A stretch of DNA of 64,000 nt from Oikopleura dioica (Eukaryota; Animalia; Chordata). The notes under the pieces were generated by a model that saw only the letters and a list, made by a program, of their open reading frames with translations, did not search any database and was not told the origin of the DNA. Numbering within the stretch: the stretch's first letter is position 1; each line of letters starts with the position of its first letter. Position numbers and translations under genes: made by a program. The stretch spans positions 12,152,001 through 12,216,000 of the forward strand of contig OU015568.1 in the NCBI GenBank assembly GCA_907165135.1. The letters run 5' to 3'. This document shows, one piece after another, positions 19,783-59,223 of this stretch.

Positions 19783-19855
19783 GCCTCCTTAGCTCAGTGG
19801 TTAGAGCACTGGTCTTGTAAACCAGGGGTCGGTGGTTCGATTCCGCTAGGAGGCA
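19783..19855 (+). tRNA. tRNA-Thr (anticodon TGT)
   Basis: Cloverleaf: acceptor GCCTCCT/AGGAGGC, D-arm AGCTCAGTGGTTAGAGC, anticodon arm CTGGT-CTTGTAA-ACCAG, TTCGATT T-loop; TTTT downstream. Confidence 0.95.
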
Positions 19856-36989: not shown

Positions 36990-37700
36990 CAGTCGTTACG
37001 CACAATTCCGTAACGCACAATTCCGGACATTTAGAGGAAAACGGAAAAAATTAAAAAACGCACAATTCCGGACAATTCGACAAAAAATATTAACTGAAAT
37101 TTATATCGTATAAGTTGACCAAGATTGAATGTTTCTCTTTGGATTTTATTGTGACATGTTTCGATCTTTGTAAGAGTCATTTTCAAACTAAAGAACAGCT
37201 ACAGTAAGTCACAAGTAGTAGGAGAAAAGAATACCCTTGAGTCGTTATGAATTTACGAAAAACGCAACTGAACAGAAAAAGCGAGGAGCTGCTCCATCTC
37301 AAAAACAACTGCACCTCGCTTTTTCTGTTCAATTGCGTTTTTCCTATTTAAAATTCATAACAACTCAAAGGTATTCTTTTCTCCTATTATTTGTGACTTA
37401 CTGTAGCTGTTCTTTAGTTTGAAAATGATCTAACAAAGATCGAAACATGTCACAATAAAATCCAAGGAGAAACATTAACTGAAATTTATTTTACTTGATC
37501 ATTTTCTTGCAAAAAAACTAAGAATGCTTGCTTGTTTCTTCGGCTTTTCTGGCTTCTGCTTTTTTCTCGATATTTTACGTTTTGAATAAAAAACAAGCAT
37601 TTTGAAAACAAAAATTTTTTCCATCTAGAATCCGCACAATTCCGGACATTTGGCCCTTTTTGCTGAAAAAAAAAGTGTCCGGAATTGTGCGTAACGACTG
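36990..37700. mobile_element. pogo-like MITE with a nested inverted-repeat segment (37128-37476)
   Basis: TIR CAGTCGTTACGCACAATTCCG, TA flanks (36988-36989, 37701-37702), internal CGCACAATTCCG subrepeats, and an inner segment with about 90-bp inverted arms. Confidence 0.8.
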
Positions 37701-40500: not shown

Positions 40501-41519
40501 CTGTAATGAATTTCATCAACGGAAGAACTGTATTGTGAAAATAGCCTTCGAGATGCCTGAAAGCGACATTGACCAAGTGCATCGGAAATGTGAAACACAT
40601 CCTTGTGTCTGTTTGCTCGAAAGGCCAAACAGGAAATACTTCCGCCGCTCGCAACTTTGGTCGGACAATGTGACCGCCAGATTACGCCAATTGTACTTAT
40701 GCAAAGTCAAAAGTCAAATTCGCATATTTTTCAATTTCCCATCAATGCAACGAACTTATTTGTGTTTCATTTTGGCACTTTTACAACGTGTTCCTTTCCT
40801 GCCAAGATGTTGAAACTCGGTAGACTAGGGGAGCAGGGTTTTATGAAAAATCAAATAAGAAGGGTCTACCGTAGCGGCTGATAAGTACCACTGACCTTTT
40901 TCAATATCATCGGAACTGGTATTTTTTGAGATTTCCGAGAGCAGTAAAAGCTTATCGAAAATCAAGCCACCGAAAACATCAAAAAATCATCGAAAAAGAT
41001 AAGCACGTATTCATTCTCGTTCGAGTCAGCGTAGCGCGCGCACGAAAATAATATTTTTCGATTTTTCTTCGGAAATTTCGTTGCGCCCTTTCTTTCACTG
41101 CTTGAGCCGAGAACCTGTTCTTTTCTAGCGATCCTCGCTCCATTAGACAGGCAGTCTGGTTAACTTAACCCTAAACCTTTCTCTTTGTATTAAGGTAAGA
41201 GTCGCCTTAAAGACTCTGGCAGTTTCTCTTTGAATTACTCTAATCTTTCACGTCCACCACTGCTTGGTACAGTCGCCATAACGACTGATCTCTTCTTATT
41301 GATCTTCAGCAAGGAGGAGGAGGCTATTTCCTCCTCCTTCTTCTACTTGACGTTAAGGCTGCGGCCCCGCTACTCGCATTCGCGCCAAAAAGCGTTACTT
41401 TCTCACAAATACCCAACGGTCGCATTTGTTTCGCGCGTTCAGCTGCGCCGGACCCTGTCGCTCGGTCCTTGTTTCACTCTCTCAAAAGAGATTTTGAGAG
41501 ATTGAACTGCCCGCACTGA

Positions 41520-44500
41520 ATGAATTCCTTCTCTTTCGGCGATGGACCGCCATCACCCAGTCGACGAAACGATAAAAAGCGTAACCGAGAGGAGGATGGT
41601 ATGGCATCCTCCTCCAAAAACTCAAGAATCTCTCCAGGGCCTAGTGGAGACACTCCCCGGCCCCGTGGCACGTCGGACTTTAACCGTCGAAGATCCAACG
41701 GAAATGGTCGCTACTTCAACCCCCGCAACCGACAAAGTTTCGGTCAGCGAAAGCAAAACAAAGGTACTCCCTCCGAATAATACTGTAGTGACTTTATGCT
41801 CAGGGAATAACGGCGGAAACAACAGCGGCCCGTCGGGGCAAGCGAATAAACCGCCCAGAAAGCTATTCCAAGGGCTTAACGTCCTAACTACAGAAATTGG
41901 AGATACCCAACAAATGATTGACCATCGGTGCGACCTTGCGCGCCAGTCAGCTGTTCACCTTGCTGATCTGGATCTCAATGCTCATTCGGATATCGTTATG
42001 AACTACGACCTCTTCGACGAGAAACGTGGCTTTTTGAAAAAGGAGGATGGCTTCGACTATCTCCAATCAAGCGCATCGGAACTCACTGACTGCGGTTACA
42101 CGTCTAATAACCACGTTGTACACCGTAACGCCCCGTTCGTATCAGCAAACCACTACGAGGACATCCTCAGCACTGCCCTCCCTGTTTACAACAACCTTGT
42201 GCTCAGCTTCAGTTGGGTGCCAGAAGACTGGAAGGGTGACAAATATCAGTTTCACCTGTTCACTCGTGTCACTGTCCAAATCATGGAAGAAACACTCACA
42301 AAGTTGCACATCAGCTGGGATGAGATCCGATCCTTAATCGTCGTTAATAACAACGGTGAAATAATCCAGCCCACGTCCGATAATCTCACTCGCAATAACA
42401 GAGCCACAGTGAAAGGAATTCGCTTTCGTAGCCTTTTCCCAACGCTAAAGTTCATTATCCTAGCCAATGGGGCTCTCTCGCCGGTTGACCCATTTCATCA
42501 TGCCTATCAGATCCCACGCTGGGCAATGCTTTTCACCTTCACTGAACGCCTGAGCGGAGGAAGAGGCTTCACCGTCGTCCCAAACAACGGAGTCAAGATT
42601 CTGTCCGTACTTCGTGCAGTTCTTGAGAGATGGTTCCACTATGTGCTGAATTACCCGGGATCGTTTACCTTTCATCAAAAGTCAAACGTCCTTAACGTTC
42701 TCCCCATTGCAGCAATCTTCAACACTACCATCAGCAGTATGAATGTTGAGACCCTCTCTCCGAATGCGGCTGAATTTGACGAATGGATCTCCCGCCTAGA
42801 TCCGCTCATCTTCGACAAAAGATTTCACACGATGTCCAGGACCATCCCGCGATTTTATCATGACATCAGCAGAGCGATCATTGTGCTCCAAGAATATTTC
42901 AAAGCAGGTACTCGCTCCCACTGGTTCTCCATGACATCAGTAGAGCTCTTCATCTCAAAACTGGAACTACAGCGATCCTCCGCCAATCTAGCTGACACCA
43001 AGCTAACCGTCAAGATGCTTCAGGACCCAGATGTAATGACCTCCAAGGCCGAACTCGCTAAACGTACAAACCATCTGGCCAATGACCTCTCTAGGTCAAA
43101 GGATGATGGTCGAATTACATCCTCCGTGGACCACATTGTTAGAAATACTACCATGGGCAAGACAGTCGCGGAAGCCGAGTCCCAGCTCATCAAAGCTCAT
43201 GAAGAACGATGCCGTGCTGCCTCGGCCATTCAGAACGTTGCTCTTTATACACACTCAACCAACCGCATCCAGAACCACCAGATAATTGAGATCAGAAAAG
43301 AACTGGTTGCGTCTGCTACTACTCCTGAAGAAAGAGAAAGGAGGCAGCGTGCTCTCGACAAAGACCTGGCCTTTAATCTGCATCACGACAGGCACTTTAA
43401 TACTGACGGTACGCTTTTTGGCTCTCTCACCATCTTGAAGGACAAAAACTCGGCTCCTGCTGTGGTCAGCCTCAAAGACGATTCCAAAGTCTCTCTTACT
43501 GGCTACATGTCCGATACTCCAAATGATCAACTTGCTCGCCTGCACGAAGCGGCCTTCCACAAGAAGGAACTCTCCACCTCGCATTACTACTACAAAGCTG
43601 GCTTGCCTGAGGGTAGTCGTTCGTTGCAAGTAAACACTAATCCCTTCACCGCCGTCCAAAACGAGGTGCCGAGCGAGATATCCTTCCAAAACGCTTCTCC
43701 CTTGGACAACTCAATCACGGAAGCTGAAATGCCCTCAAATGAGAACATTCGTCAGGATGATGATCGTTCTTCAACTTACTCCTCCGATCTTCAAGCCGAG
43801 GAACTCACTCAGCGCCTCAATGAGTCCAAGGTAAAGACCACTAAACACTTTCTCTTCCAAAAGACGCTGTTGGATCACAACATTGCGATTGAACAGTTCA
43901 GCGATGATGAAAGAAGTGAGGTATCGGCCATTATTCAATCCGTCCAGCCTCCAGCTCCTGAAAATCAAGCTGAAATCTCTGCCCCGACAATTGTACAAGT
44001 GAAAACCATTGACCCCCAAAAGGGCCAAGTCGATCACGAGCTAACTGATCAATTTGCGACAGGGACAGATGCGAAATGGAACGCCATCAGCAAGATTGAG
44101 GAGCAAAACAGCTGGATTAACACTGTAGAAACATTTGACAACTCTGAGGATTTCATATTGAAGAAGAAGCCTGTTGTATTCTCCTCGGTGGAAATGTTCA
44201 ACAACGTCAAGGATAAGGCCAGTGTCCGAACCCTGAAGATCGAAAATGCAATCAGCAGATTCACTGGAATCAGCAACAAGAAAGAACTCGGAGTTCTTGT
44301 TAGAACATGGCACTCAAATATATATGAGCTCAGGGGCATCCTCGTTAACAACCTCCGTGATACAATCAACACGGACGATAAACGCAAAATTGAGAGTATG
44401 GAGCTTGATGATGCTGCATCTCTTGAAAATTGGAACAACTTTCTAGCGGGAGTCAGAGTATATCGCCTGGCTATGTATGACCCCGAATCCCTCATTTCGA

Positions 44501-44823
44501 TGCTCTTCTGCAATGCTGACACGCTCATGTCATATGTTCCAATTCCTCCGTCCAAAATAATCTACAATTGGGTCAAACTTATGATAATGGACAACAAAAA
44601 GGACAATGGTCCAAAGACGCCTCAAAACATCCTTCTTTCGCAACTGGTGGCGCTCGGCCTGCTCGTCACCAGCAGAAAATCGCACGTAGCGGTTTACAAG
44701 CGGGATGATCTACCTGGACAGCATCTCTTAACGAGCAAACCCATCTACGCCAGGATCCTAAAGGTCAGTCCTGCCCTGGTTTCAAGGCGCTTCAATATGG
44801 TAAAAACTTTATTAGAATCATAG
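41520..44823 (+). CDS. ORF1-like protein of the retroelement (short basic ORF 41520-41780 joined to the 1093-codon frame by a putative 40-nt intron)
   Basis: Long uninterrupted frame 41542-44823 upstream of pol. The overlapping RG/N-rich ORF 41520-41780 joins in frame if GT 41764-AG 41803 is spliced. No CCHC, RRM or PHD motif recognised. Confidence 0.7.
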
Positions 44824-47800
44824 CCATCAAAGAATATCAGCAAGAACTTAACTTCACTATTTTTGACTGTCCAAAGCTGGCTGAAGAAAAGCCAGGCTTC
44901 AAAGCTTTTCTTAACGAAGTTACTAGCAAATTGCTTGCTAATACTCTGCTTTGCGGCTTTCTCTGCTGGCTTCGGGACCGCAATTTCATCTCATCTTGTT
45001 CTTATAGGGGCCTTCTAACGCTTAATGACTCTGAAGATGACGATGATGACGACTCTTCCTCCGGCCTCCCACCCCTTTTACATCCTCCCCTTCTCCCAAA
45101 CTTCAAACAATATAAAAATCTTCTGGAAATCGAAACCACAACCCAACGAGAGAAGAAAGTTCTCCAATTCTTTGAATCAGGTACTGTTCCTAGAATGCCC
45201 TTCTCTCATAATATTCCGAGCCCTGAGGTCTTGGCTAAAGGTAAAGGCCTGGCTGGTATTTTGCCGCCGACCAGTGAGCTCCCAGCTCTGAAAAAATCCA
45301 TTCGATGCCCAGTTCCTACCTCAGGTGATCTCTCTGCGGCAGTTATCCAGCATAATGAGCAAATTATTAATGCCGCTGATAACATTGTGATCATCAGCGC
45401 GAACCTTGGTAACTGCAGATCCCTTGACAAAATTAAGCGACTAGTAAACCATCATCGCTCAGCCCATATTTTTTGTATTAGTGAATTGTTCATGGAAAAA
45501 GATGTGGCGCTGGATAAATCAAATTGGCCTAATGGATTCCATATTCATGTAGGCATGCCCTCTCGCGACGGCAAGAATCAGATCTTTACAATGATCATTC
45601 TACGCAATAATATTACTGTTAAGAGGATGATCCCCGATCTTCATCAAAACCTGGCGCTTCACATTGACGTCAATGGAACTCAACTTCTCGCCTGCTGTAT
45701 TTATAACTTCTGCGGCGGCCGTTATGATAACTACAAAACCAAGTACAACGTTGATGACTCGGCTTTTCTGCTGGACCTCGCCAAGGTTAGTCAAGAAAAG
45801 GGTGACTCTCCCTGCTTCATCACCGGGGACTTCAATCTCGAACTTGCAAAAAATAGCCCCAAATTTGCTCGAAAGTGTGACGCTGTAAAAAATGCCCTGT
45901 TAGATTTCAACCGTCTAACTAACTTCATTACATTCAGGCGTGAGCTTCGCAACGGCCATACCCTCGAGTCAGCAATTGATCATTTCTTCCTCTTCTCCGG
46001 CAAACTCGACCTCACCAAAGCTCTCTCCAAACCTGGTGATCACAGAACAAGTCTTCAATCTGACGGACACGTCGGCCTAGTTACCGTACTTCCCATCCGC
46101 CCCCCAAACGGTAAGATTTGGAAGTTATGGAGAGTACCCGAGGAAAAAGACCTTCATTTTTGTTACAAAACCGGCATGAAGCTAATCTACTCTAACCTAC
46201 ATAGGTTCAATGAGGAGGGAGGGATGGACACGGTTCAGGTCACACATGACCTGCTCGTGAAGTATGCTGAACTGACCCGCCCGCTAAAAGAAAAAATCAT
46301 CGTGCAAGATAATTATAAGGTCACGACTTCTGCTACCACTAGAAAGTGGCTGCGGACTGGCTTTTACCTTGAAAAGCTAATCCGGGACACTAAGAAGGAT
46401 GAAGTTCCTTCCTCCTGGTGGCGTAAGGTAGTTGACCTATGGGTTGACTGCAAGAAAGTAATTGAGAAACTCAAAACGGCTGATCGGCGGTACCACCTTG
46501 CGCGTAAAGCCGATCCGTACGAACTAAGTCTGACGGACAGCTGGGGTATTTTCAAAAACGACATTAAATTGACCAATAGCATGGAAGTGAATGACAGCCC
46601 CGATGACGTTGCAAATGAATTTTCTGAGTTGCAAAAGTCCACCAAGCCCAATTTAGAGAAATTGAAAGAAGCTGAGCCTCCCTCATCCCTTCACAAACTT
46701 CCAAAACTTGATTTTGAAACTGTTAAATATCACAAGTCATCTAACAGGCCTTCTATTCGGGAAATTTACTCCAAAAATAAAAAGAATACTTGTGATTTAT
46801 ATAATATAAATAAAAAATGTCTAGAGACCTTGCCGTGTGTCGCAACCAACTTCTTCATCCTGATGCCAATTCAGCTCTGCATTAGTGAAGGTAAGCTAAT
46901 CGATGCATGGAATATTAATAAAGTCGTCCCCATCCTAAAAAAGAATGGACGCAAAAGGCCTATCACGGTGGGAAGCTGTATTGGAGGTATTATTGAGAAA
47001 TTAGCAACCCGAACCCTTGCTGATTACCTCTTTCATTTTGGCTTAATCCCTCCCTCTCAACATGGCTTTAAGCCTTCCCACTCGTGTGGGTCGGCAATAT
47101 TTAATGTAACTAAAGTGCTTACCACTGCACTTGCGTCCCGAGTCGTGCCTAGCGGGATAATAGACCGTGCCGAACGCGCCAGCGGCGTTGTCATGATCGA
47201 CGCCGCCAACGCGTTCGGCACGGTCCCTCACGAGGTGCTCATCAGAATGATGCTCCCCTTCTGTAGCGTCAGATTTATTGAGTTCATCAGAATTTTTCTC
47301 GTGAGATTTTTCGTAGTTTCCATCAGGGGGTTTCTCAGCAGTGTATTTAAACTAGAGCCTTTCGGCTTGCCACAAGGCGCTGCGCCCTCCCCAATTCTCT
47401 TTTCCTTCTTCAGCACCAGTATCCTGCTAAACGCTCTAATTGATCCTATTCTAGTGCCTGAGCGCCCGCTTGAGCTCACCCTGTCATCCTCGTCTCTGCT
47501 GTGCAATGAGACGAACTGCCGCTGCGACCACGGAGCTCCACGTGAGTCCTGTATCACCGAAGGTATTAGTTTGGGACAGAGGATGAAGTGCGGTAATCAT
47601 CCTCGTTTAGCAGGAGCGTTTACCTTGTATGCGGACGATGTGGCAGCCGCGGTGTTTGGAGCCGACATCAACGATGTCAACGCTGGCATTGCGAGTACTG
47701 CTGAGGGCGCCGCTGATCGAATCGAGAGCCTGGGGCTTAGAGTTGCTGATCAGAAGACTGAAGTACTCTTAATAAGTAAGTCCGACCATCTCCCCAACAT

Positions 47801-48743
47801 TAACATCAGAGGCCAAGCCATCCCTGTTTCCAACTCCCTTAAATACCTCGGCGTAACCCTTGCATCCGTAAATGGCAAGTTGTCCCTTAACAATCATGAC
47901 AAGATTATCACGTGCAGGTTGCGGAGCAATCATCACAAGCTAGCCACTCTAAGAGGCGTCGTCAGTCCAAAAGCAAATGCCCAAATGGCCCGAGGCCTAA
48001 ACTACGGAATCATAAATCACACTGCAGACTATAGGCCTATCCCGCCGCAATCCACAGTGAACACATGGCAGCGTATTCACTGTAACTCGCTGTTGGGTCG
48101 TACACCTCGGCCTTGGTACATCATTGAGATGCAACGTAAAATGGAAGAGGAACAGCTCTCTTCCTCGTCCGCATCACAAAAGCCTACCCTTAATCTCCCC
48201 ATTGACTTCATCAGGCTCGAGTACGGCAAGCCTGTAGCTGATGATGACCTCATTGTCCTGGACAGATACGGTCAACCCACTGTTCTCGACAATATGGTCA
48301 CAATGGGGGTTAATAATATGCATAAAGTCTGGAAACTGCATCTCCCGGTCTGTGCATGGGAATCGCTTAAGCTCTCCTTGATCCTAGTTGACCGCAAGGG
48401 AAACAGGGTCGGTGTGCTTCCGGACTTCGGTGAGTATTCCAGGAGAAAGACATTCTTCATTAACGAGTCCAGGTTCCATCATGACAGAACATTTGGCATT
48501 CTCACCGCCAAAGAGCATGCTGAACTAGCCTCCCTGTTAGTTGAAAGGGAAAGGTTGCGCTCGCTACTATCTGCGGGACATCTCACTATTAGAATGACCC
48601 ACCCTAGGCGTGAGTTACTTAAGCAGAAAATTGATAAGAATACCTGGCCTTTTCACCTCATCAGCTTTTTAACGACCTACCAACGAGCATTCGGAACAGC
48701 TTTGTATCTGATGACTTTCCAACTATTCTTAAACTATTTATGA
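44709..48743 (+). CDS. ORF2: apurinic-like endonuclease plus reverse transcriptase
   Basis: APE motifs SANLGN, CISEL, CIYN, TGDFNL, IDHFF, SDGH; RT motifs QHGFK, IDAANAFGTVPH, GLPQGAAPSPILF, YADD, KYLGV. The frame is open from 44709 and the first ATG lies about 65 codons before the APE. Confidence 0.95.
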   Translation, partial: STWTASLNEQTHLRQDPKGQSCPGFKALQYGKNFIRIIAIKEYQQELNFTIFDCPKLAEEKPGFKAFLNEVTSKLLANTLLCGFLCWLRDRNFISSCSYRGLLTLNDSEDDDDDDSSSGLPPLLHPPLLPNFKQYKNLLEIETTTQREKKVLQFFESGTVPRMPFSHNIPSPEVLAKGKGLAGILPPTSELPALKKSIRCPVPTSGDLSAAVIQHNEQIINAADNIVIISANLGNCRSLDKIKRLVNHHRSAHIFCISELFMEKDVALDKSNWPNGFHIHVGMPSRDGKNQIFTMIILRNNITVKRMIPDLHQNLALHIDVNGTQLLACCIYNFCGGRYDNYKTKYNVDDSAFLLDLAKVSQEKGDSPCFITGDFNLELAKNSPKFARKCDAVKNALLDFNRLTNFITFRRELRNGHTLESAIDHFFLFSGKLDLTKALSKPGDHRTSLQSDGHVGLVTVLPIRPPNGKIWKLWRVPEEKDLHFCYKTGMKLIYSNLHRFNEEGGMDTVQVTHDLLVKYAELTRPLKEKIIVQDNYKVTTSATTRKWLRTGFYLEKLIRDTKKDEVPSSWWRKVVDLWVDCKKVIEKLKTADRRYHLARKADPYELSLTDSWGIFKNDIKLTNSMEVNDSPDDVANEFSELQKSTKPNLEKLKEAEPPSSLHKLPKLDFETVKYHKSSNRPSIREIYSKNKKNTCDLYNINKKCLETLPCVATNFFILMPIQLCISEGKLIDAWNINKVVPILKKNGRKRPITVGSCIGGIIEKLATRTLADYLFHFGLIPPSQHGFKPSHSCGSAIFNVTKVLTTALASRVVPSGIIDRAERASGVVMIDAANAFGTVPHEVLIRMMLPFCSVRFIEFIRIFLVRFFVVSIRGFLSSVFKLEPFGLPQGAAPSPILFSFFSTSILLNALIDPILVPERPLELTLSSSSLLCNETNCRCDHGAPRESCITEGISLGQRMKCGNHPRLAGAFTLYADDVAAAVFGADINDVNAGIASTAEGAADRIESLGLRVADQKTEVLLISKSDHLPNINIRGQAIPVSNSLKYLGVTLASVNGKLSLNNHDKIITCRLRSNHHKLATLRGVVSPKANAQMARGLNYGIINHTADYRPIPPQSTVNTWQRIHCNSLLGRTPRPWYIIEMQRKMEEEQLSSSSASQKPTLNLPIDFIRLEYGKPVADDDLIVLDRYGQPTVLDNMVTMGVNNMHKVWKLHLPVCAWESLKLSLILVDRKGNRVGVLPDFGEYSRRKTFFINESRFHHDRTFGILTAKEHAELASLLVERERLRSLLSAGHLTIRMTHPRRELLKQKIDKNTWPFHLISFLTTYQRAFGTALYLMTFQLFLNYL

Positions 48744-49171
48744 AAAGCAAGCACAAGCACCACAAAAGGGCAATCTGGTGCGACACATGCAGGCCAGGCG
48801 CACCCTTTTACAAGTTCGACCTCCATCCCTCTTTGCCACCTACCTCAAAACCATCTACTCCTCGCGTTATTCGTTCCAATTGTACTCCATCTGATCTCCG
48901 GATGGACGAATATCTGAACAATCTTGAGGAAAGTATTGAATTTACCAAGAAAGAACATGCACGGGTGTTGCTTCTTGCAGACTGGTGGTTTCCCTTTAAT
49001 AAGAAAAGAAAAATTTATGAGTCTTTTGAGTCATTTTGTAGTCTTGTGAAGTTTCTAACAGGAATATCAGGAAAGGAAAATCTTATGGCTAAGCAACTCT
49101 TGTTCGATAAGACCACAAAGCTTGCTCTTGAAAGAGCAGCCATCAAAATCACCTTGAATAAGATGAAGTAA
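48740..49171 (+). CDS. ORF3, CxxC-containing; probably the spliced C-terminus of ORF2
   Basis: Overlaps the ORF2 stop as ATGA and contains WCDTC. A GT 48704-AG 48747 intron (44 nt, AT-rich) would fuse it to ORF2 in frame. Confidence 0.6.
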   Translation: MKSKHKHHKRAIWCDTCRPGAPFYKFDLHPSLPPTSKPSTPRVIRSNCTPSDLRMDEYLNNLEESIEFTKKEHARVLLLADWWFPFNKKRKIYESFESFCSLVKFLTGISGKENLMAKQLLFDKTTKLALERAAIKITLNKMK

Positions 49172-49244
49172 CCCCCTCCTACTCTCATATGCATCAGTCA
49201 TATAATTTCTTTTAGAAGTCAACTTCCTCGGCCAACGACTTCAA

Positions 49245-51459
49245 ATGGTGATGGATGATGTTGATCCCGGCTACGCAGTCGAGTATGTGCTGTACGATAT
49301 AAAAACTGGCTCATACAAGGCTATTACTCATATCGAGATTCAGTCACCATCCTTCATCGCTGGCCGAAATGTCCATGTACTTCCATCCTTTCATGGCGAA
49401 GACATTACACGCAACTTGAATGTTACTAAAGGATATAAGTTACCCTCCCATATCCTTCGATTGGCAGATGGCTATTACAACAGCTATAGCAAACACTTCG
49501 GCTATGATAAGAACAACTTTCTCGTATGGCTTGGCGTCAAACAGCAGCTACCAAGCCCTGCCACTCGGGCGAAAATTCGTTCTGCTCGACAGGCATGGGA
49601 AAACATCGCGACTGCTCGGAATTCAGCCTGGAAGTTGGATGTTCGCTGCTCACTCTCCATCGCTGAGATCAATGAGGCCAATCCTTCTTCCTTCCCGAGC
49701 GACATGCTATTCGAATCGTCAGAGCCACATCTGGACGCTCGAATTAAAAGCTGCCAGCATCGCCCTCTACGGTGACTTCTTCATTCTCCCAACCGCAGGA
49801 GCTGCAGTTATTCTCAAGGACAAGAAGGGAACTGCGGGCGCCTGGATCAACATCAGGACGGTTGAGCTGCTCCAGAGATCAAATGATGCCATGAATGCTC
49901 TCCCATCAGTTCTCATGAAGCTATCCCACTACTACACGGTTCTTCGAGCTTTTCGTCAAACTGGGCTCTTCAGCAATCTCGACTCAAACGAGCAAATCGC
50001 CTCCATCGCAGTAAATCTCTGCTCTCAGCCCTGCAAGAGTGAGATTGCTGTCCTCAAGACTGATATCGTCTCCTTGATTCACAAGTTCGGCTGTGGGGAT
50101 GAACACACCGACATCTTTGATTATGCCCACGGAAAATCACTACCACACTCTGCGTTCTTAGGGATCAATAAGGGCATACTCGAGCAAGACCTTATCGAAA
50201 TTACTCAATTTGAGTGGAATATGATGGAGGAGGTTGCATCATCATCCTTCGGTCACTCGTTGTCCACGCTCCTGAACAAAATGGCCGCGCACGTCTCATC
50301 CTCCATGTGCAACTTCTGCTCCACGCTTAAGGACGTCGTGGATTCCCGGGACGCTGGTGCCTCCAATGCTGATCTGGAAAACCGTGCCGCTAATGCTCAG
50401 AAGATCTTAATTGCCTTCATAAACAAGCTCAAAGCCATCAGCACAAACCGTAAGTCTGGTGAATCTAGGCGGATGACCGAAAGCCTCTACTCCTTCATCC
50501 CCGCCGGTGAGGAATCTAGGATGATCCGCCACCTTCTTGAGCACCATGCTTGTCTAATTCAAGCCACTGGCTTTCTAAAAACGCGTCCCACTCGTCCAGC
50601 GCTTCATGTGCTTTGGAGATCAAGAGCTCTCACGATCCTCGTCGTCAACGATTGCTGTAAGCTTCTCAAACTACTTGTAGCTGAGATGGCTCGCATCACG
50701 GGTCCGGGAAACCCCTCCGTCGTTGATCCCGAGCTGAAGGATCACTGCACTCTCGCAATGACTCTTCTGAGCATCGTAGCGAAAACAAAATCCAAATTGG
50801 AGACCAATGGTGGCAATGCGTTTTCGAAAGCCCTGGCAAAAGTGGAGCTGGCCATTAACACCACTTTATTGAAAGCCTCTCCCTCTTTCACCATTTCGCG
50901 AGAAAAAGCCCGTGCGATCACACGTCCGGCCAAGAATCTCTGTCCAGTTCAGAGCATTGAAAAAGCGGATCAAGCTGAGCTTGACCGCTTCCCATCACTC
51001 ATTGACCCAGAACTTTCCATCATAAAAGCTATGGCTGAAGCGCAGCTTCAACTCCTAACTAATATCTTCCAAGGATCTATCACCACCTCCGGTAGCGATG
51101 TCATCGACCGAGGCTGCCCGCTTCTTTCCATGACTACTCTAAACGACTCCTCATCTCTTCCCTCGGGTGAAGAAGCCAACCTTGCGCTTGTGGAGTCAAT
51201 CCACTCGCTTCGTCTTCGCGCCCTGGTTGATTCTCGCAAGAGGCGAGGTGATTTTCTCGGCCGGCCTACTCGTTATGGACTATCCGACCGAATAATGGCA
51301 TCAACTCCAGCTGGTGCGGTCGGTGAGGAGATCTTGCATCCCAATCACACTTACGAGACCGTGTACGCAGCGACTGCTGTTGTAGAGCCTGCAATCATCC
51401 GACTGGATGATGATGAAGAGCCATCCTCCTCTGGCATGAAGCTTCGCTCAGCAAAATAA
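49245..51459 (+). CDS. ORF4 (49245-49775) and ORF5 (frame open 49420-51459): extra downstream ORF(s) of unknown function
   Basis: Two long overlapping frames, 176 and 679 codons, downstream of pol. They are preceded by an AT/pyrimidine-rich spacer ending TTTTAG (49215) and followed by a CT-rich UTR with AATAAA at 52021. Confidence 0.75.
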
Positions 51460-52392
51460 CTCTCAGTAATCATCTTTCAGTAAGTCGCTGATTATAAGTC
51501 GCACCATTCTTATTAAAAACTTCAGTCATCCGGGTACCTGCAAGTTCAGACTGGCTTATCAACCCCCGTCAACTACAAAAGCGCCAGCACTTTGTGAAGA
51601 TTCCTCTACGTAGTTTATTTACTTAATAACTCTCACTGTTTGACCCACCATCCCGCTCTTTTTCTCTACCAAAGTCCTCATCGTCATCTTTAGCTGTCTT
51701 TTAAATTCAATCCCTCTCGGATATTACTTCTCTCTCTCAAAATTCTCTCAAAACGTTTCATGACTTCTGTAATGTATACCAATCAACTCCTGCTTAGCTT
51801 ACATCTCTTGTCAATATTCCATACTTTTAAAACATCACCCTCGCCTTCCTCTTATCCTGCAAATTACTGCACATTTGTTATTTCATCACATATTGCAATA
51901 GGCTATAACCATGCTTTCATGCCACAGTCTCAGCATCTGTAAGTTTCCCCATCTCCATTCTCTTATCTCCATAATATTCTCTCCACAATTGTCAATATTT
52001 CGAACATCCTCTTACCACACAATAAATACATCTTGACAAGAAACTCTCAAAGGATTCGATACAGATTATGAGGCTGTATCTCCTCTTGATTCAGTCTTTT
52101 GAACTATTTTATTGCATGAAACACAGCAGGGCCTATGACTAAACTATATCAGTATGTCTTTACAATCTATGCGCTAATCTTAAATCCTGAAAATTATAAT
52201 TCGGAAACTGAGACTTTAACCCTATAACAATCTCCTATAAACTGAAACATTTGGTAAGTTAAAACAGTAAAACAGTCGGGTGGAACAGTAGATGTCTTCC
52301 TCAGGGTAAGCGTGGTACTTGTTGTAATATGATCTGAAGTCTGCAGTTTACACCACTAATAGGTAACAATAAACCCCCCAACCTGTGCGTGG

Positions 52393-55300
52393 CTAATTCT
52401 TTGGAAAGCAAGCGCGACCAAGGTACGATTCGGACAATGTTGTTGGCAGATGATGTCTCAGAGACAGTAGTCGCTTTCGTTCCAAATCGTAGAAACAGAG
52501 TGGTACCTGGCACTCTGGATATGTCGTAACGGATCGTCGCTTCCCGCCGCTGTTCTGGTAAATACTGTAAACTCGTCGACAGTAGAGTGTACAGAGTGCG
52601 ACCACGTCCGTCAATTGCCACTCACGTGAGAGGAGATGCTCCATAAGTGGTGGAGCACTATTTCCCTCATAGCGGCCAGTACCGAACGGAACGGAGTTTA
52701 CAACCTCTGAAATTGATCGTCAATAATTATCACATTAGATTTAAAACTATCAGAAGGATGAAGCTACGACATCCTCCTCCAGACAGACTAATGCCTCAAG
52801 CTTACCTTCGGTTAATCGATCAAAATAATCTCGAGGGAAGAACCGCTGTTGCCGTGAGGGGCGCGCGTCGGAGTAACATAAGGGCTTAAGATCGGCAGGC
52901 TCGCGCTCCCTCTCCACAAAGCTGTCGATGTCCTTAACAAGCTGCGCCCATCCCTCTCGATTCTGCGGGCAGTCGACGTCGCTACAAGTTGGCACCTCAC
53001 ACCGGTTTTGAGGAGTCGGCAGCATCTCAGCCGGGAACAATCGTGTTATCACCCGTCGTCGCCGTCGAGCCTCCAGTCCGTGCAAATGGGTGTTCAAGCG
53101 TGAAACCCGGTCTTGTACCTCGGTGGAGGACAAGCCGAACTCGAAAGGATTTTTCGTGCCAGCCAACTCCTCTCTAAAAGTTTAAAATGACTTTACATTC
53201 TCATCCTTCAGTAGTGCATGCAAATTTCTCCTGTCTACTCTTACCGGCATTGCAAGGCCAAGAGTTGCTTTCGCGATTCAGAGTCGTAATCAGCTACTAC
53301 TGGACTGTCCCTCACGCGGCGTCGGAACTGTTGGTAAATAGCGTCGGCATCCCTAGAATATGCTCACTAGTAATAAGATTGAATTGTAGACGCTCCAATG
53401 AGCGAATTAACTATGGAGGATGATGGTCTCACCTCCTCCTAATTGAACTAGGCCAAGAAATTAGCGCCTACTCTTTCTGGAAGCGTGAAGGTACTTACGA
53501 AGCCAGATAGTCTGGTGAGCCGGCAAATTCTGGTCTATCGGCGGGGCACAGCTCCTCTGGAAACGGCTGTCCTGGGAACGTATCAGGCTTGTGAGCGGCC
53601 CCATATCCAGCGGCTTGGTGCTCTGGCTCAGCCAGCAACAGATAATGTAGCCAAGTTGAAAATAGATCGGCCTGTGTCGCCGTGATGTTCGCGAAGTCGA
53701 CTATGACGTTCCCAGTGGGCATCGACAATCGTGCGGGGACGCCAAAAAGCTGGAGAATATCGCAAAGTATCCCTATCTCGCGACAGTAACGTGGATATTC
53801 CTAGTGGTTCTTGGTTAACATCTCACTTATTCTCTACTTATTATACCTTGTGAACATCTCTTTTGACCTCGTCACTGAAGACGAGATGATAGTAAGTTCC
53901 TGGGCCGGAAAAGAAGGGGTCCATCATCACTCGTTGCTGGCTTGCGACATTCTGATCGATCGCGGCCTTTCCAACAGGGTAGATGACAGCGTTGAGGTCT
54001 GTTGGTGACAAGCCAACCGATGCCTGACGATGATGTCGCATCTTCATCTCCTCGTCTTTTGATTTGAAGTCCAACACCGGGCGTACTTGTCCCTCTCTTG
54101 AAACTCTGCGCATCAACTCGGCCAAGTGCGCAAAAGTCATATACCTGATTAATTACATTTATCTTCTGCTAATTATTCTGAGGAACAGATTTTGGGACTT
54201 ACATTGTTGACACGCCAGCCAGATAACTCGCGCCTGCCCGCAAGCATGGACCATCTGTAGTGCAAGTAGGCGACAAGCACATTAGGTTGAGCGGCCCCGA
54301 ACGATGGTCGTGAGCGCTTGATTGGCAAAACACGCGTGGCAGATTCCGGGCGAGAAGGCACTGTAAGACTTCGCCGCTAAACTGAGTGGACGGGTCGTGA
54401 TAATACGCAAAGCACAGTTTCTAAATGGGTTGTATCAATACTTGCACTAAGGAGGCTGTATCTACATCCTCCTGGTCATCTCTTGTGTCTGAAAATCCTT
54501 TCGTTTCTTAACTACTCACACTTTGCAGAATTCTCTTCGACTGGGTGAAGCCGCGACCCTGCTCCTTTGCTAACGTGAACTCAGCAGCAGCGTCCACTGT
54601 TGTGGAATAATCAGCGGCACAATTTCGTCGGTAAGGGCGGTTGAACAAAGTGGCGGCGTGCATCAAAGATTGTAACTCATCCTTGGGCACCTCTCGCAGT
54701 CGCTTATCGAAAAACTCGACAACATCGTTTACTAAAAGAAGATTCGGTTATGCCCTCATCTGTAGCTAATCCTCACCAGATGTCAAGGACTTGTATATTT
54801 GAGTTGCAATGTGCATTGCTTCGCTCTCCTTAGGCAAATTCTTCTCAATGGTATCGTTCAGAATTTGTCCACATTCGCTATCTGTTAAGCCTCCGTCTCT
54901 CTTCTCACGGGCGGCTTCCCCCAACGTCGTCGTCAAATCCGTCGAGTATGGTGAAATGGTTGCTCCACCGCGGTCTGACAACTTGGGAGGACGTACACCC
55001 TTTGCTCGAAACCGGCGTAATCGCATGCTGCGTGGCTCCTGCTTGCGCTGCGCCCGTTTTATGCCCCGCCGCACGTTTCCGGTTCGAGTAGCTGGTCGCG
55101 ACGGCCGCGGCCGAGGTGGCTCTGGTGTGTCGTGGTCAGTAGATGAGGATGATCCTTCCTCATGCTTAACATTCACTGCAGGAGCCGGCGCTGGATTGAT
55201 ATTCTGTTCGTCATCGTCGCTTTCGATGACGATAATGGTGGCCTCGCTACTCGGCTGAACCATCTCTGGACCTTCGTTGGTGTCCATCTGCTCCTCAGCT

Positions 55301-57781
55301 TCAAGGACCTGCTCTTCGTTGTGAGCCATCTCTTCGACCTCGATTTCCTCCTGGCCATTCGTTGGCGTAGCTACTGGGCTAGGTCGAGGCATTCCACTTG
55401 TGGCCTGACGCTCTGCTTGAACCGATGCTGGACTTGTCGAGCCCTCTGGAACCCCTCCTGAAGCAGCTGCTTCATCCTTTTGAACAGGACTTGTCCGTCC
55501 ATGTGATGCACTTTTGGGCGATGTCTCTTCTTCCATTGGAACAGGTGCAGGGCGTGGATCGTCCAGCAGAGTATCGTAATTCGGATCAATAGTATTTTCA
55601 TTGTGATAGACAGTTTGATTCGCTATTGTCTCCAACGAAGGAATCTCTGTCTCGGTCTCCTGTACAGTCTCATCTGGTGGCGACGAGGGAGCCACTGAAG
55701 CCCCCTTTTCTGCATCTTCTGACGTATCTTTATTTCCAGCTGGAAGTTCCGTGGAAGACACGCACTCTCCGGTTTTCTCCTGGGCAGCAGCATCCAGCGG
55801 ATCGGTCACGATGATCACTTCCTCTTCTGAGTTCTGGGCCCCAGTCGATCCATCTATTTCGGGGGCCTGAGATTCGGTCTGATCTGTTTCCATAGATGCC
55901 GTCGTTGTCTCTACAGGCGCGGCGTTGGGCGAACTGGATGATACACCTTCCTCGTCCTCGGGCGTTGGCGCTGACAACGATGAAGCTTGTGCTGGCTGCT
56001 CACCTGTCGGCAGTTGTCGATTTTGCTGTGTTGTTCTTACGCTTCGTTTCACTCGCTCGGCCTCTTTTCCAACTAAAGGTTGTAATTATTATCAAAGCAT
56101 TAAAATCCTAAATTCTTGTATCACGAAAACTGTGACTTACCGATATACTCCATTCGTGAAACCTTCAAGTCTCCATCGTCGGTCTCTTCAACCATGTAAC
56201 GCGCTCTCACTCGCGAAGGTCTTGAGGATGCTTCTGCCTCCTCCTCGTCAGAAACAGGCGGGCTGCGTTGGCTCGCAGGTATAGCGCATGCTTGGCGGAA
56301 ATTGTTGTAAGTGGGCGGAGCCATGAAATGATGCAGCTCTACGCCATCATAATCGTTGAGTGGTGGAGCTTTAAGATATATGTTAAATCACGTTTGTTTT
56401 AGTATATGCTCCGTGAAGCACAACTTACCATAATCCTCTGGTGACAATGCATGCAAACACTGTCGCACACGGTGCTCCCCTACAACGGCAATATGATCCG
56501 CTGGCATGAGAGTCGCCACCAATTGTTTTGACGTGTCCAAAATTCTACATCTCATTAAGAGATAGACAGGGTCCATTGGAAGTGTAGCCATGTGTGACGC
56601 ATAATCACGGTTGTACTTCGAGTTGAACCCAACCTAAATGGAGGTTATGCCGGTCTTTAAAAGCAATCCCACAGCGCGGAAGTGCGCTACCCACCTTCAG
56701 GACATGCCCCAATAGCTTTGCTCCGATCTTCGTGGGACGGATACTCCTCACGTATGAAAATGTCTGTCGCATTATCTCGGCAATAACGGTTGGTCCCTGT
56801 CGTGAATTCTTGTCCAGCATCTCGAATAATCTAGAGTAGACAGATATTTAATCAGGATGATGTATTCTCTTCCTCCTACCTCGACTGAAACTCCTGATAT
56901 TCCGGCATCTGCGGCAGCAAATAATACTGGTCAGGTCGAAAAGCGGATTGATGACGAGCCATTTCTATCAGAGCTCCAGTTAGCCTTACCATCTTTTCAA
57001 CTCTTGGTTGAAGTTTGCTCATCTTCATCTTTGAGTTGCTTGCCTGATGCAAGAACGGTCGAATCATCTTCTGCATAAGTACACACTGCATGGTTGGGTA
57101 TTTGAGCATGCTCAAGTATGAAAGTTGCTCCGCCGAATGATAGAGCAAATCTAGCAGCTGAGAGCGTGACATTGCTCTGGAGTAAGCATCCAGCAGTGCC
57201 TCGTGCACCAACTAAAATATATTTGCATAATTTCTTGCACTCGAATGGGCTAACAATAAAATGGTTACACTCAAAATCTGTTCAAATTCTGTTCTTAAAG
57301 TCGATCTGCTCATTTTCTACAAGATACCTATTCATGACAAATCTCTTACCTCGCTCAAGAGTTCACACTCCACTCGGGAGTAATGTGAGGACGGCTCGCT
57401 GAAAACGTTGTTTCCGGGAAGGATTGTTGAGCCCTGATTCAGCTTCGTTCCTCCCAGAACTCCATTTGGTGATATCTCAACCCAGGCGGAAGTTGGTGGT
57501 ACGTAGGTAGAAGTGGAGGGGCCCTCCTCCATTAGCGATACCTCGGCTTCGTCAGAGGAGCCGCTGGTCATGCTAGACTTCTTCCCCTTCGTTTTTGCCT
57601 TGTTGAAAAACGTGCCCAATAGGGTTCGTTTGCGATCTGGCTCCTTGGTCGGGCTTCCCTCGGCATCAGCACTTGGCTTGGCGCGTTTCTTGCCCTTATC
57701 GGTGCTGTTTGCGCCGCGTGACGCCTCTACAGCAGGTTCGTGAATCTGGCCTTCTTCGCCCATCGCGGAGGAGGATGGCAT
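52393..57781 (-). CDS. Intron-rich antisense gene inside the retroelement, roughly 1,500 aa, unknown function
   Basis: Track ORFs 57332-57781, 56876-57211, 56605-56820, 56388-56591, 56121-56324, 54766-56052, 54508-54690, 53841-54140, 53495-53728, 52750-53166 and 52393-52644 mostly end or begin at GT-AG sites that join in frame (e.g. introns 56831-56879, 54732-54776). Minus-strand AATAAA at 52108-52113. Confidence 0.75.
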
Positions 57782-59197
57782 GTCTTCCTCCTTTTCCTAT
57801 TGTATAAAAGTTAATGCTAGCGTTTAGGTTAGCGATTTTCACAGGTCTTACCAAATTAGTCTCTGGGATTTTATCTTTTATCTCCCTTATCTAGTCTGTG
57901 GAGTATCCAAGATATAATAGCCGCACGGTTTATGAAAAATCTTGTGTGAAGCGACCTAATATAAGGGAAACGCAAGATTTAAACTAACTGCGATTAATTT
58001 CGAAGTTTCTCTCAACCTCACCCTTACGGTCGCAGCTGAATATTCCCGATCATTTCACATCTCCTCCCGCTATATTCCCTCTAGATAGATGTTTACCTGT
58101 GTTGGCGGAAAATAAGCGTCGACCGGTCGCACTATCTGGACTTCAGCCATCTGCAAATCTCCAAAAGGAGGAGGAGGTCGGGACATCCTCGGTCTTGCTC
58201 GTTTCGATACTCCATCTTTCAGCTGTTGTAGTAGTCACGATAAGTAGGCAACTGACCACCTCGGGCTTCCGAGCCCTCATATCAACAACAATTCTAGAGA
58301 AAATAGCATTTTTCCAGGAAATCCTCAAAAACACTCAATATGCGTCTAGAAATCATTATGTAAGTAGGATTTAACAGAATTAGTGAATAAAATTGTCAGC
58401 ATTGAACTATGCAGTAGGATTATCCAACACTGCGCGTCATCTGCGTCGTCTTCCTTATCTTCAATCAAAACAACACTTCTCTCGCGCTCCAGATCTTATC
58501 GGTCAAGTAGCGTGTGAGGCTTCGTGACGTCGCTGCCGCAGCCCAAAATTACGTAATCGCGTGGGTGGGAAGCGTGTACCCTCGGCTCACGTAGTAAGAT
58601 GCGCGAAATCGATGTGAGCCATTCTGTATGACGTCCCTGAGGTGTGTTTGCGCTTATTTCTATCTCCTCCTTTTACTAACACCTCCTTGCTTATGCTCCA
58701 ACTTTTTGTAAACGTTTTGTTATCTTGACGACGATGAGGATAGATCCTCCTCCTCCTGACGACCCGCACAAACTGCAACAAGAGAAAAGACGACAACCCA
58801 GAAGACCCGCTGCAACCTTGACGATGACGATGAGGTCCCAGGAATCCTCCACCGCTAAAGCCCTGTTTACCGCACCGAGAAGACCCAGAGAAGCCAATAA
58901 AATCCATAAAGATTTATTCATCATTCCCAATTTTTCCCCATTATATTACCTCCTCCCTTACCCTACTGTTAGTCTCTCTTTCTTTCATTCTTTCTTTCAT
59001 TCTATTTTCGTATTCTGTAACCACCACATCAGTGTTAAGCTTTGATTACGTCTCAATCAAAGTCCTCTTTCACTGTGCTATATACACTCCCATCATGCAG
59101 CCACTGTTCAGCTGCCCTATGCTCATTATATATACTGTTTCCGGAAATTGCTCCTGCTTGCGGGTTCAATTTGCCAACCACTTTCATAACTGCATCC

Positions 59198-59223
59198 AAT
59201 AAAATACCAAAAAAAAAAAAAAA
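59198..59223 (+). terminator. Polyadenylation signal and genomic poly(A) tail of the retroelement
   Basis: AATAAA, 5 nt, then A15, then the TSD copy. Confidence 0.8.

What the first reader, a model, noticed from the sequence alone, without database searches (positions are those of the whole stretch)
41091..59223. 18-kb giant LINE-type retrotransposon with a multi-gene, bidirectional payload
Seen: an intact APE-RT ORF, a 7-bp direct repeat CGCCCTT at 41084-41090 and 59224-59230, and AATAAA+A15 directly before the second copy. The left copy sits where AT-rich host DNA changes to a CT-rich leader. These are the hallmarks of target-primed reverse transcription, and they put everything between them in one insertion: ORF1, APE-RT, ORF3-5, a convergent intron-rich gene and a terminal mini-unit. 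Known: APE-type LINEs are usually about 3-8 kb with two ORFs. Giant, intron-bearing, bidirectional retroelements are known mainly among Penelope-like Terminons, a different RT class. Inference: this is either a new giant LINE architecture (possibly the full-length form of the larvacean Odin clade) or a roughly 7-kb 3' transduction that became fixed. The long intact ORFs suggest recent activity.
Basis: partly seen in the sequence, partly recalled or inferred. Interest (0 to 1): 0.95.

Follow-up and report, generated by a model that had tools for sequence, protein, structure and literature searches.

The report
Giant LINE carrying an antisense gene
This is an 18-kb jumping gene of the LINE type in the tunicate Oikopleura dioica whose last third is a conserved, 11-intron gene on the opposite strand, a layout I found in no description of LINEs, although the main coding frames of this copy are broken.

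Summary
In detail: CGCCCTT at 41084-41090 and 59224-59230, AATAAA plus A15 at 59198-59223, an APE-RT ORF, and a composition change at both ends. The 7-mer alone is at chance frequency. The window is Oikopleura dioica OKI2018_I69, chromosome PAR.

Paralogous elements settle the interpretation. Seven other elements of the same RT clade (OKI and Bergen genomes, 27-47% identity in the APE-RT part) were fetched with their surroundings. Six carry, downstream of the RT and convergent to it, a homologue of the minus-strand gene. A seventh lost it secondarily. AATAAA plus poly(A) lies beyond that gene. Intron positions are shared between the window and its closest relative. The antisense gene is therefore part of the element, not a 3' transduction.

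- The plus-strand "ORF1, APE-RT, ORF3-5" are fragments of two ORFs: a giant ORF-A (2400-2870 aa in intact relatives) and ORF-B (about 600-750 aa).
- In this copy they are split by at least three frame changes at homopolymer runs, so recent activity of this copy is doubtful.
- The "terminal mini-unit" is not a conserved gene.

The accessory proteins have no recognisable domain. I rate this a new variant of a known kind. Whether the clade is "Odin" could not be tested.

The parts
41084..41090 (+). Left copy of the 7-bp target-site duplication CGCCCTT
   Evidence: It sits exactly at the change to pyrimidine-rich leader. The 7-mer alone is at chance frequency.
41091..41519 (+). 5' untranslated leader, pyrimidine-rich, with a GAGGAGG..CCTCCTC hairpin at 41311-41339
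   Evidence: The 5' end is inferred from the target-site duplication and the composition break.
41520..41780 (+). Probable true N-terminus of ORF-A (basic, 'EEDGMASSS'), in a different frame from the next piece
   Evidence: The annotated gene g11947 starts at 41520. It resembles the N-terminus of the intact L001 ORF-A in style only, with no significant alignment. A frame change near 41.7-41.8 kb is inferred, not located.
41542..44823 (+).
   Evidence: Collinear with aa 199-1189 of the single 2623-aa ORF-A of L001. No Pfam or PDB match. AlphaFold2 pLDDT 34.7.
44799..48665 (+). ORF-A piece 2: APE endonuclease (about 45402-45992) and reverse transcriptase (about 46932-47930, YADD at 47631-47642); ORF called 44931-48743
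   Evidence: Pfam hits. Aligns to L001 ORF-A aa 1183-2458 at 46% identity. Catalytic columns invariant. The frame changes from piece 1 at the A5 run 44803-44807.
48668..49171 (+).
   Evidence: Aligns to L001 ORF-A aa 2460-2618. The frame changes at the T5 run 48661-48665.
49239..51459 (+).
   Evidence: Both pieces align to the single 731-aa ORF-B of L001. The frame changes near the A4 run 49742-49745. ORF-B follows ORF-A in all eight elements of the giant clade and in the metagenome contig L006. No Pfam or PDB hit.
51460..52392 (.). Convergent 3' ends: G-poor stretch, plus-strand AATAAA at 52021-52026 with no A-run after it, minus-strand AATAAA (TTTATT) at 52108-52113
52393..57781 (-). Antisense gene, 12 exons, 1446 aa: exons 57781-57350, 57211-56880, 56830-56695, 56633-56429, 56368-56141, 56072-54777, 54731-54520, 54420-54203, 54144-53847, 53800-53499, 53173-52806, 52706-52393
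   Evidence: My model is in frame with one terminal stop and GT..AG at all 11 introns (45-325 nt). The record annotates a 1344-aa gene at 52393-58186. Homologous exons lie on the minus strand downstream of the RT in L001, L003, L005, L008, L009 and L010. Intron positions are shared with L001. No Pfam hit.
57782..59197 (.). 3' terminal region: presumed promoter of the antisense gene (TATA-like TTTTATACA just upstream of the ATG) and 3' UTR of the sense RNA; conserved block at 58824-58858
   Evidence: The block is 91% identical to L001 27692-27726, whereas the rest of the two elements is unalignable as DNA apart from one 69% stretch in the RT.
59198..59223 (+). AATAAA, 5-nt spacer and A15 tail
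   Evidence: The same AATAAA-spacer-poly(A) lies beyond the antisense gene, or beyond ORF-B in L004, in all seven other elements.
59224..59230 (+). Right copy of the target-site duplication CGCCCTT

Best explanation
Window 41091-59223 is one copy of a non-LTR (APE-type LINE) retrotransposon of an Oikopleura-restricted clade. Its standard architecture is: 5' leader; a giant ORF-A (about 1100 aa of unknown function, then APE endonuclease, RT and a C-terminal tail); ORF-B (about 600-750 aa, unknown function); a convergent, intron-bearing antisense gene (about 1100-1450 aa); and a 0.8-1.8-kb terminal region ending in AATAAA plus poly(A). Shown: the parts, their order and their conservation across eight elements; shared intron positions in the antisense gene; and poly(A) lying beyond that gene. 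Inferred: an 18-kb sense RNA is transcribed from the leader, reads through the internal AATAAA at 52021 and the whole antisense gene, and is polyadenylated after 59198. ORF-A protein nicks the target and copies this RNA by target-primed reverse transcription, which leaves the 7-bp duplication. The antisense gene's 11 introns survive every round because on the sense RNA they read as CT..AC and cannot be spliced. The gene is expressed afterwards from its own promoter in the element's 3' end. Its retention across the clade implies that it serves the element. What it does is unknown. Its features are a basic, nuclear-localisation-like N-terminus, a long acidic low-complexity middle and a Cys-containing conserved C-terminal half. 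This copy has three or four frame changes in ORF-A and ORF-B. It is probably no longer autonomous, unless those are assembly errors.
For: Identity: the window equals O. dioica OKI2018_I69 OU015568.1. The nearest RT relatives are all O. dioica. Collinear protein-level homology with L001 (47% RT identity, another chromosome) runs from ORF-A through ORF-B. It continues through antisense exons 2-5 and 8-12, where all but one weak match lie in minus frames, and into the terminal block. Antisense homologues lie downstream of the RT, convergent to it, in L003, L005, L008, L009 and L010. The RT tree gives a 100/100 clade of eight. L004, the only member without the gene, is nested with L009 and P0020/L010, which have it. 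Splice junctions fall at the same protein positions in L001. AATAAA plus A6-A18 lies 8.9-11.1 kb after the RT in the antisense-bearing elements, and none has an A-run at the ORF-B-proximal AATAAA. Within the window, tetranucleotide usage of 52-59 kb correlates better with 41-52 kb (0.72) than with host DNA (0.53). GAGGA..TCCTC palindromes occur 15 times, all between 41314 and 58755, against 1.2 expected. There are no terminal or internal repeats. Sense ORFs are intronless: L004 ORF-A translates directly to its annotated protein.
Against: The 7-bp duplication is at chance frequency on its own. No duplication of 7 bp or more was found for L001, L003, L004 or L005, and L010 gave only ambiguous 7-mers, so no 5' end is independently confirmed. 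No near-identical second copy was found: the 90% cluster of the annotated protein has one member. Mobility of the full 18 kb is therefore inferred from old paralogues, not from recent copies. No transcript data were available. ORF-A and ORF-B of this copy are frame-broken. Antisense similarity to L009 (29% over 78 aa, E 2e-5) and L010 is weak.
Confidence: 0.85

Rival explanations
1. An 11-kb LINE (41091 to about 52045) read through its own poly(A) signal once and carried along about 7 kb of host DNA containing a convergent host gene (3' transduction), which then became fixed at this locus.
For: A plus-strand AATAAA at 52021 follows a 3'-UTR-like G-poor stretch, and the minus-strand gene has its own AATAAA at 52108-52113. 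3' transduction is known for L1 (PMC6431247).
Against: Homologous antisense genes sit in the same place and orientation in six other elements that differ by 53-73% in the APE-RT part, in two genomes. A one-off transduction would be private to one subfamily. L1 transductions rarely exceed 1-3 kb (PMC6431247). Composition and the palindromic motif are shared by both halves.
Confidence: 0.03
2. The LINE ends near 52.05 kb and is site-specific. It always inserts tail-to-tail next to members of a host multigene family, so the linkage reflects target choice (as R1/R2 do with rDNA) and not co-mobilisation.
For: The linkage and convergent orientation are constant. No exact duplication was found for the other elements.
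Against: No element has a poly(A) run at the ORF-B-proximal site, while all have AATAAA plus poly(A) beyond the antisense gene. In the window the poly(A) and duplication bracket the whole 18 kb. The lineage-specific GGATG/GAGGA palindromes occur in both halves of the window element and of L001, and are nearly absent from the flanks. The closest RT pair is also the closest antisense pair.
Confidence: 0.05
3. The loci are not mobile elements but old, domesticated host gene clusters (an RT-containing gene plus neighbours) that were duplicated as DNA.
For: Each subfamily is single-copy, the paralogues are very divergent, and no recent copies were seen.
Against: Every unit ends in AATAAA plus poly(A). 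The window copy has a flanking duplication. The sense ORFs are intronless in an intron-rich genome. Several copies are decayed by frame changes (window, L005, L010), unlike genes under host selection. The flanking host genes differ at every locus. Low copy number with high family diversity is what is reported for O. dioica transposons (PMC4122922).
Confidence: 0.04

Closest known systems
Odin, the Oikopleura-specific non-LTR retrotransposon clade (Volff et al. 2004, cited in PMC4122922 and PMC8008620)
   Same: Same host genus and the same class (non-LTR, LINE-type). The nearest relatives of this RT are found almost only in O. dioica, matching the description of Odin as exclusive to Oikopleura.
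   Different: No Odin reference sequence or structural description was available here. O. dioica holds at least two deep LINE clades, and I cannot say which one is Odin. No paper I could read describes an 18-kb form or an antisense gene. PMC8008620 reports LINE/Odin as almost absent from the repeat annotation of this very assembly.
Terminons, giant Penelope-like retroelements of bdelloid rotifers (Arkhipova et al. 2017; review PMC6431247)
   Same: Giant size (tens of kb), an RT-based element carrying several extra ORFs, and retention of introns.
   Different: Terminons have a Penelope/Athena RT without APE, lie at telomeres and carry hammerhead ribozyme motifs. Here there is an APE plus LINE-type RT at an internal chromosomal site, no ribozyme hit in Rfam, a poly(A) tail and a target-site duplication.
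Drosophila TART telomeric LINE and human L1 antisense features (ORF0, antisense promoter); from my own knowledge
   Same: LINEs with antisense transcription. TART is long (about 10-13 kb) and its antisense RNAs are spliced.
   Different: Neither carries a large, conserved, multi-exon antisense protein-coding gene. L1 ORF0 is about 70 aa and primate-specific, and TART antisense RNAs have no established conserved ORF.
Plant Ty3/gypsy Tat/Ogre-type LTR retrotransposons with extra or antisense ORFs, and Tor elements of Oikopleura with an env gene driven by an internal promoter (PMC4402516)
   Same: Retroelements that keep an additional gene with its own promoter inside the element.
   Different: Those are LTR elements that replicate in particles. 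Here the carrier is a LINE that uses target-primed reverse transcription, and the extra gene has 11 introns.
Engineered L1 retrotransposition reporters (an antisense marker cassette in the 3' UTR); from my own knowledge
   Same: An antisense-oriented gene placed in the 3' part of a LINE is copied along with it. This shows the mechanism can carry such a cargo.
   Different: In the reporter the intron is sense-oriented so that it is removed. Here the introns are in the gene's own (antisense) orientation, so they are preserved. The cargo is natural, 5.4 kb long and ancient.

Membership tests
APE-type non-LTR retrotransposon (LINE) | Reverse transcriptase domain with the catalytic (Y/F)ADD motif | tested here: met
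   Pfam RVT_1, E 3e-13. A901 D902 D903 are invariant among four family members. 5090 RT-containing hits in the exhaustive search.
APE-type non-LTR retrotransposon (LINE) | Apurinic/apyrimidinic-type endonuclease N-terminal to the RT in the same ORF | tested here: met
   Pfam Exo_endo_phos at aa 158-354, E 2e-7. E185, G299 D300 N302, S347 D350 H351 are invariant.
APE-type non-LTR retrotransposon (LINE) | No long terminal or terminal inverted repeats; 3' end with a poly(A) signal and A-tail | tested here: met
   No internal or terminal repeats. AATAAA plus A15, and the same in seven relatives.
APE-type non-LTR retrotransposon (LINE) | Target-site duplication flanking the whole insertion | tested here: inconclusive
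   An exact 7-bp repeat lies at both ends of the window copy, but the 7-mer is at chance frequency. None of 7 bp or more was found for L001, L003, L004 or L005, and L010 was ambiguous.
APE-type non-LTR retrotransposon (LINE) | Dispersed copies at unrelated loci, including recent or 5'-truncated ones | tested here: inconclusive
   Eight dispersed paralogous elements with different flanking genes. All are deeply divergent, and no near-identical copies were found.
Odin clade (Volff et al. 2004) | RT groups with Odin reference sequences in a phylogeny of LINE clades | not testable with these tools
   No Odin, CR1, L2 or Jockey reference sequences were available, and the defining paper is not held. 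My tree shows only a 100/100 giant clade and a second O. dioica clade.
Odin clade (Volff et al. 2004) | Restricted to Oikopleura or larvaceans | tested here: met
   18 of the 20 top hits I looked up are O. dioica proteins or cluster with one. The other two (P0023, P0026) are unnamed ENA metagenome proteins.
LINE 3' transduction | The downstream segment is host DNA private to one source lineage and absent from other family members | tested here: not met
   The antisense gene is present in 7 of the 8 elements of the clade.
Terminon / Penelope-like element | Penelope/Athena-type RT (with or without GIY-YIG), hammerhead ribozyme motifs, telomeric location | tested here: not met
   APE plus LINE-type RT. 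The only Rfam hit in the window is a tRNA. The locus lies about 12.2 Mb into a 17.1-Mb chromosome.

The most novel reading that the evidence does not exclude
A whole clade of LINEs has kept, since its origin, a third gene of cellular type: multi-exon, with its own promoter, on the antisense strand. The element needs it for its own propagation or for protection from host silencing. Its introns are routinely carried through reverse transcription. O. dioica LINEs in general (the second clade also spans at least 12 kb of ORFs) would then be the first recognised 'giant LINEs'. The scattered GGATG/GAGGA palindromes of the window-L001 lineage would be a cis-acting code read on both strands.
Probability: 0.5. 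Interest if true: 0.85.

Novelty: new variant of a known kind. Interest (0 to 1): 0.75.

Why it matters
LINEs are usually taken to be compact elements of 3-8 kb with one or two ORFs. A 2019 review of giant eukaryotic transposons lists giant LTR elements, endogenous retroviruses, Terminons, Polintons and others, but no LINE. It also notes that L1 transductions rarely exceed 1-3 kb (PMC6431247).

A LINE clade that stably moves 17-19 kb would raise the known cargo capacity of target-primed reverse transcription. That cargo includes a 5.4-kb antisense gene with up to 11 introns. It would be a natural case of introns passing through an RNA intermediate because of their orientation. It would also point to an unknown accessory function that a LINE finds worth keeping, in the most compact animal genome known, where every kilobase is thought to be under pressure.

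There is a practical side. These elements are annotated in the public record as ordinary host genes (g11947 and its minus-strand neighbour), and the repeat annotation of this assembly reports LINE/Odin as almost absent (PMC8008620).

Tried and rejected
- Exact-sequence look-ups of ORF1, ORF3 and ORF5 found nothing.
- Two word-indexed homologue searches of ORF2 (whole protein, then the RT region) gave only weak LINE hits, because close relatives are annotated as fusions of about 2500 aa. The exhaustive search solved this.
- PDB sequence searches with ORF2, ORF1 and an ORF-B profile gave no hits.
- Pfam gave nothing above threshold on ORF1, ORF3-5, ORF-B of relatives or ten antisense exons.
- AlphaFold2 of ORF1 with a 6-row alignment gave pLDDT 34.7, which is unusable.
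- AlphaFold2 of the antisense exon 9-10 region gave pLDDT 57.9 and pTM 0.54. Foldseek against PDB then gave no match better than E 0.085 or TM 0.25.
The RT alignment found only two loci.
- Searching for target-site duplications in L001, L003, L004, L005 and L010 gave nothing convincing. Alignment of the 5' leaders was uninformative.
- I considered a signal-peptide-like minus-strand ORF at about 58925 as an upstream start of the antisense gene. I rejected it because L001 has no start codon there.
- I considered programmed frameshifting at the ORF junctions. I rejected it because L001, L003 and L004 have one uninterrupted ORF-A.
- Assignment to Odin, CR1, L2 or Jockey was not possible. Volff 2004 and Denoeud 2010 are not held.
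- I could not obtain database ids for the annotated spliced antisense proteins, so they were never searched or folded whole.

Full report
**Observation.**
- CGCCCTT lies at 41084-41090 and 59224-59230, AATAAA at 59198-59203, and A15 at 59209-59223.
- The A15 is the only homopolymer A or T run of 12 or more in the window.
- The ORF at 44931-48743 carries Exo_endo_phos and RVT_1 domains, with catalytic columns conserved in relatives.
- Composition changes at both ends. Inside, GC is 0.44-0.55 with negative GC skew, and a pyrimidine-rich leader and trailer stop abruptly at 41.09 and 59.22 kb.
- The 7-mer itself is not special. It occurs 8 times in the window against 6.8 expected, four of them on the plus strand. 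The duplication counts only in combination with the other evidence.

**Identity of the locus.** An exhaustive profile-free search with ORF2 found a 100%-identical 2503-aa protein, CAG5088721.1, of Oikopleura dioica OKI2018_I69. Its contig stretch is identical to window 31520-61459 on chromosome PAR, OU015568.1. The record annotates 41520-51459 as one plus-strand gene and 52393-58186 as a 1344-aa minus-strand gene. Of the 20 top RT hits I looked up, 18 are O. dioica proteins or cluster with one.

**Family comparison, the decisive evidence.** I fetched the surroundings of seven relatives:
- L001: OKI, chromosome XSR, 47% identity
- L010: OKI, chromosome 2
- L003, L004, L005, L008, L009: Bergen assemblies

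Two metagenome contigs were also fetched. The main findings follow.

1. **The plus strand holds two ORFs, not five.**
   - In intact members the plus strand holds one giant ORF-A: 2623 aa in L001, 2402 aa in L003 and 2872 aa in L004.
   - ORF-B follows it and is about 590-750 aa.
   - L001 ORF-A maps collinearly onto three different frames of the window. These are 41845-44820, 44799-48665 and 48668-49147.
   - L001 ORF-B maps onto two frames, 49239-49637 and 49753-51273.
   - The frame changes sit at homopolymer runs: A5 at 44803-44807, T5 at 48661-48665 and A4 at 49742-49745. A fourth is likely near 41.7-41.8 kb.
   - L001, from the same assembly, has 10 kb of unbroken frames. I therefore lean to real mutations over assembly error, at roughly 60:40.

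2. **The antisense gene belongs to the element.**
   - Translated comparison of the window with L001 is collinear beyond ORF-B. All but one weak match between 52.5 and 57.5 kb lie in minus-strand frames.
   - I built a 12-exon model, 57781 to 52393, encoding 1446 aa. It has one terminal stop, and GT..AG bounds all 11 introns.
   - Its exons 2-5 and 8-12 match L001. Exons 8-12 match L003 and L005. Exons 11-12 match L008, L009 and L010.
   - These matches are always downstream of the RT and convergent to it.
   - Breaks between matches coincide with my exon junctions. L001 has canonical splice sites at the same protein positions for at least five junctions.
   - L003 lacks intron 9.

3. **The 3' end lies beyond the antisense gene.** Every element has AATAAA, a spacer of 3-16 nt and A6-A18 beyond the antisense gene. 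This lies 8.9-11.1 kb after the RT in the antisense-bearing elements. None has an A-run at the AATAAA just after ORF-B.

4. **One clade, one secondary loss.** In an RT tree the eight elements form a clade with 100/100 support. L004, which alone lacks the antisense gene, is nested with L009 and P0020/L010, which have it. Its absence is therefore a secondary loss.

**Evidence inside the window that 41-59 kb is one unit.**
- Tetranucleotide usage of 52-59 kb correlates 0.72 with 41-52 kb and 0.53 with the host. Its two 3.5-kb chunks correlate with the host at 0.42 and 0.59, below every host chunk; the lowest host chunk, the tandem repeat, is at 0.60.
- The palindrome GAGGA(N2-16)TCCTC occurs 15 times, all between 41314 and 58755, against 1.2 expected.
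- There are no internal or terminal repeats and no second copy.

**Interpretation.**
- The 3' transduction alternative fails. A one-off capture could not be shared by elements 53-73% divergent in the APE-RT part.
- A site-specific LINE that always lands beside a host gene family is disfavoured by the position of the poly(A) tails. The duplication brackets all 18 kb. The lineage-specific palindromes occur in both halves of the window element and of L001 and are nearly absent from their flanks.
- A domesticated gene cluster is disfavoured for four reasons. The units have poly(A) ends. Their sense ORFs are intronless. Several copies are decayed by frame changes. The flanking genes differ at every locus.
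- I therefore conclude, at about 0.85, that this is a giant LINE whose antisense gene is an integral, ancient component.
- The mechanistic steps are inferred from established LINE biology and were not observed. They are an 18-kb read-through sense RNA, target-primed reverse transcription, and introns protected by their orientation.

**Function of the accessory proteins.** Nothing was recognisable.
- Pfam and PDB sequence searches were empty.
- AlphaFold2 models were poor, with pLDDT 34.7 and 57.9, and Foldseek found no fold match.
- The antisense protein has three recognisable parts. Its N-terminus is basic (KGKKRAK...DRKR). Its middle is a long acidic, Ser/Pro-rich exon. Its C-terminal half is conserved, with Cys motifs and a well-conserved last exon (RRVYGVYR...FYD...LSLR..LP).
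- Retention across the clade argues that it benefits the element. Its role is open.

**What is known.**
- The literature I could read describes Odin only as an Oikopleura-exclusive non-LTR element of unclear origin (PMC4122922). It reports LINE/Odin as almost absent from the repeat annotation of this assembly (PMC8008620).
- A review of giant eukaryotic transposons lists no LINE (PMC6431247).
- The original Odin paper and the genome paper's supplement were not available. A prior structural description cannot be excluded, nor can I say which of the two O. dioica LINE clades is Odin.
- The second clade also spans at least 12 kb of plus-strand ORFs (L011), so large size may be general for O. dioica LINEs.

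**Verdict.** It is a new variant of a known kind, with interest of about 0.75.

Noticed in passing
window 41311-58755; L001 9753-28060: There are short palindromes of the type G(A/G)GGATG...CATCC(T/C)C or GAGGA...TCCTC, about 13-14 per element and spaced roughly 1-1.5 kb apart. They occur in leader, coding, intron and trailer sequence on both halves. The GAGGA..TCCTC form is absent from the flanks; under a broader arm definition the counts are 13 inside and 5 outside (window) and 14 inside and 2 outside (L001). They occur in the window and L001 but not in the six other elements. In frame they read as acidic residues followed by SSS on either strand. Three have an ATG in the loop (41589 'MASSS', 57768 minus 'MPSSS', 58168 minus). 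One is positionally conserved near the ORF-A N-terminus (window 41592-41614, L001 9813-9837). Function unknown.
   Followed up: partly
window 58824-58858 (L001 27692-27726): A 35-nt block is 91% identical between two elements that are otherwise unalignable as DNA. It lies about 370-500 nt upstream of the poly(A). It contains another GAGG...CCTC hairpin and reads ...DDEVP(G/V)(I/L)LHR-stop on the plus strand in both. It is a candidate cis element (RT recognition site or antisense promoter) or the end of a small exon.
   Followed up: partly
window 47163-47225: An imperfect 64-nt palindrome (84%) lies inside the RT coding region. It was the only self-match of the element.
   Followed up: no
L011 7584-20016 (Bergen FN653016.1): A member of the second O. 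dioica LINE clade (P0016) also has four large plus-strand ORFs (769, 2036, 352 and 582 aa) spanning 12.4 kb. A minus-strand multi-exon gene (1700 aa annotated) follows from 20.6 kb. No poly(A) was found inside the locus. Large multi-gene LINEs may be general in this species.
   Followed up: partly
window 3202-5180: A tandem array of a 56-bp unit with more than 30 copies, most of them 100% identical. GC and AT skew are raised locally.
   Followed up: no
window 14298-14946; 37128-37476; 24773-25534 with 5194-5349: There are three foldback-type inverted repeats: 307-nt arms at 96%; nested 78- and 48-nt arms at 95-96%; and 202-nt arms at 81%. A 156-nt dispersed repeat occurs at 5194-5349 and 24968-25123. 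These are possible miniature transposons of the host genome.
   Followed up: no
window 62514-63245: A 243-aa ORF contains a Thr-rich repeat with 9-15-nt periodicity (ACGACTACGACC...). It looks mucin-like.
   Followed up: no
window 19783-19855: A tRNA-Thr (TGT) gene, the only Rfam or ARAGORN hit in the window.
   Followed up: no
window 41520-51459 and 52393-58186 (public annotation): The public record models the LINE as one spliced 2503-aa host gene (g11947) and the antisense gene as a 1344-aa gene starting at 58186. In L010 the upstream 'Kelch' gene model appears to absorb the N-terminal part of ORF-A. Gene predictors bridge the frame changes with false introns.
   Followed up: partly
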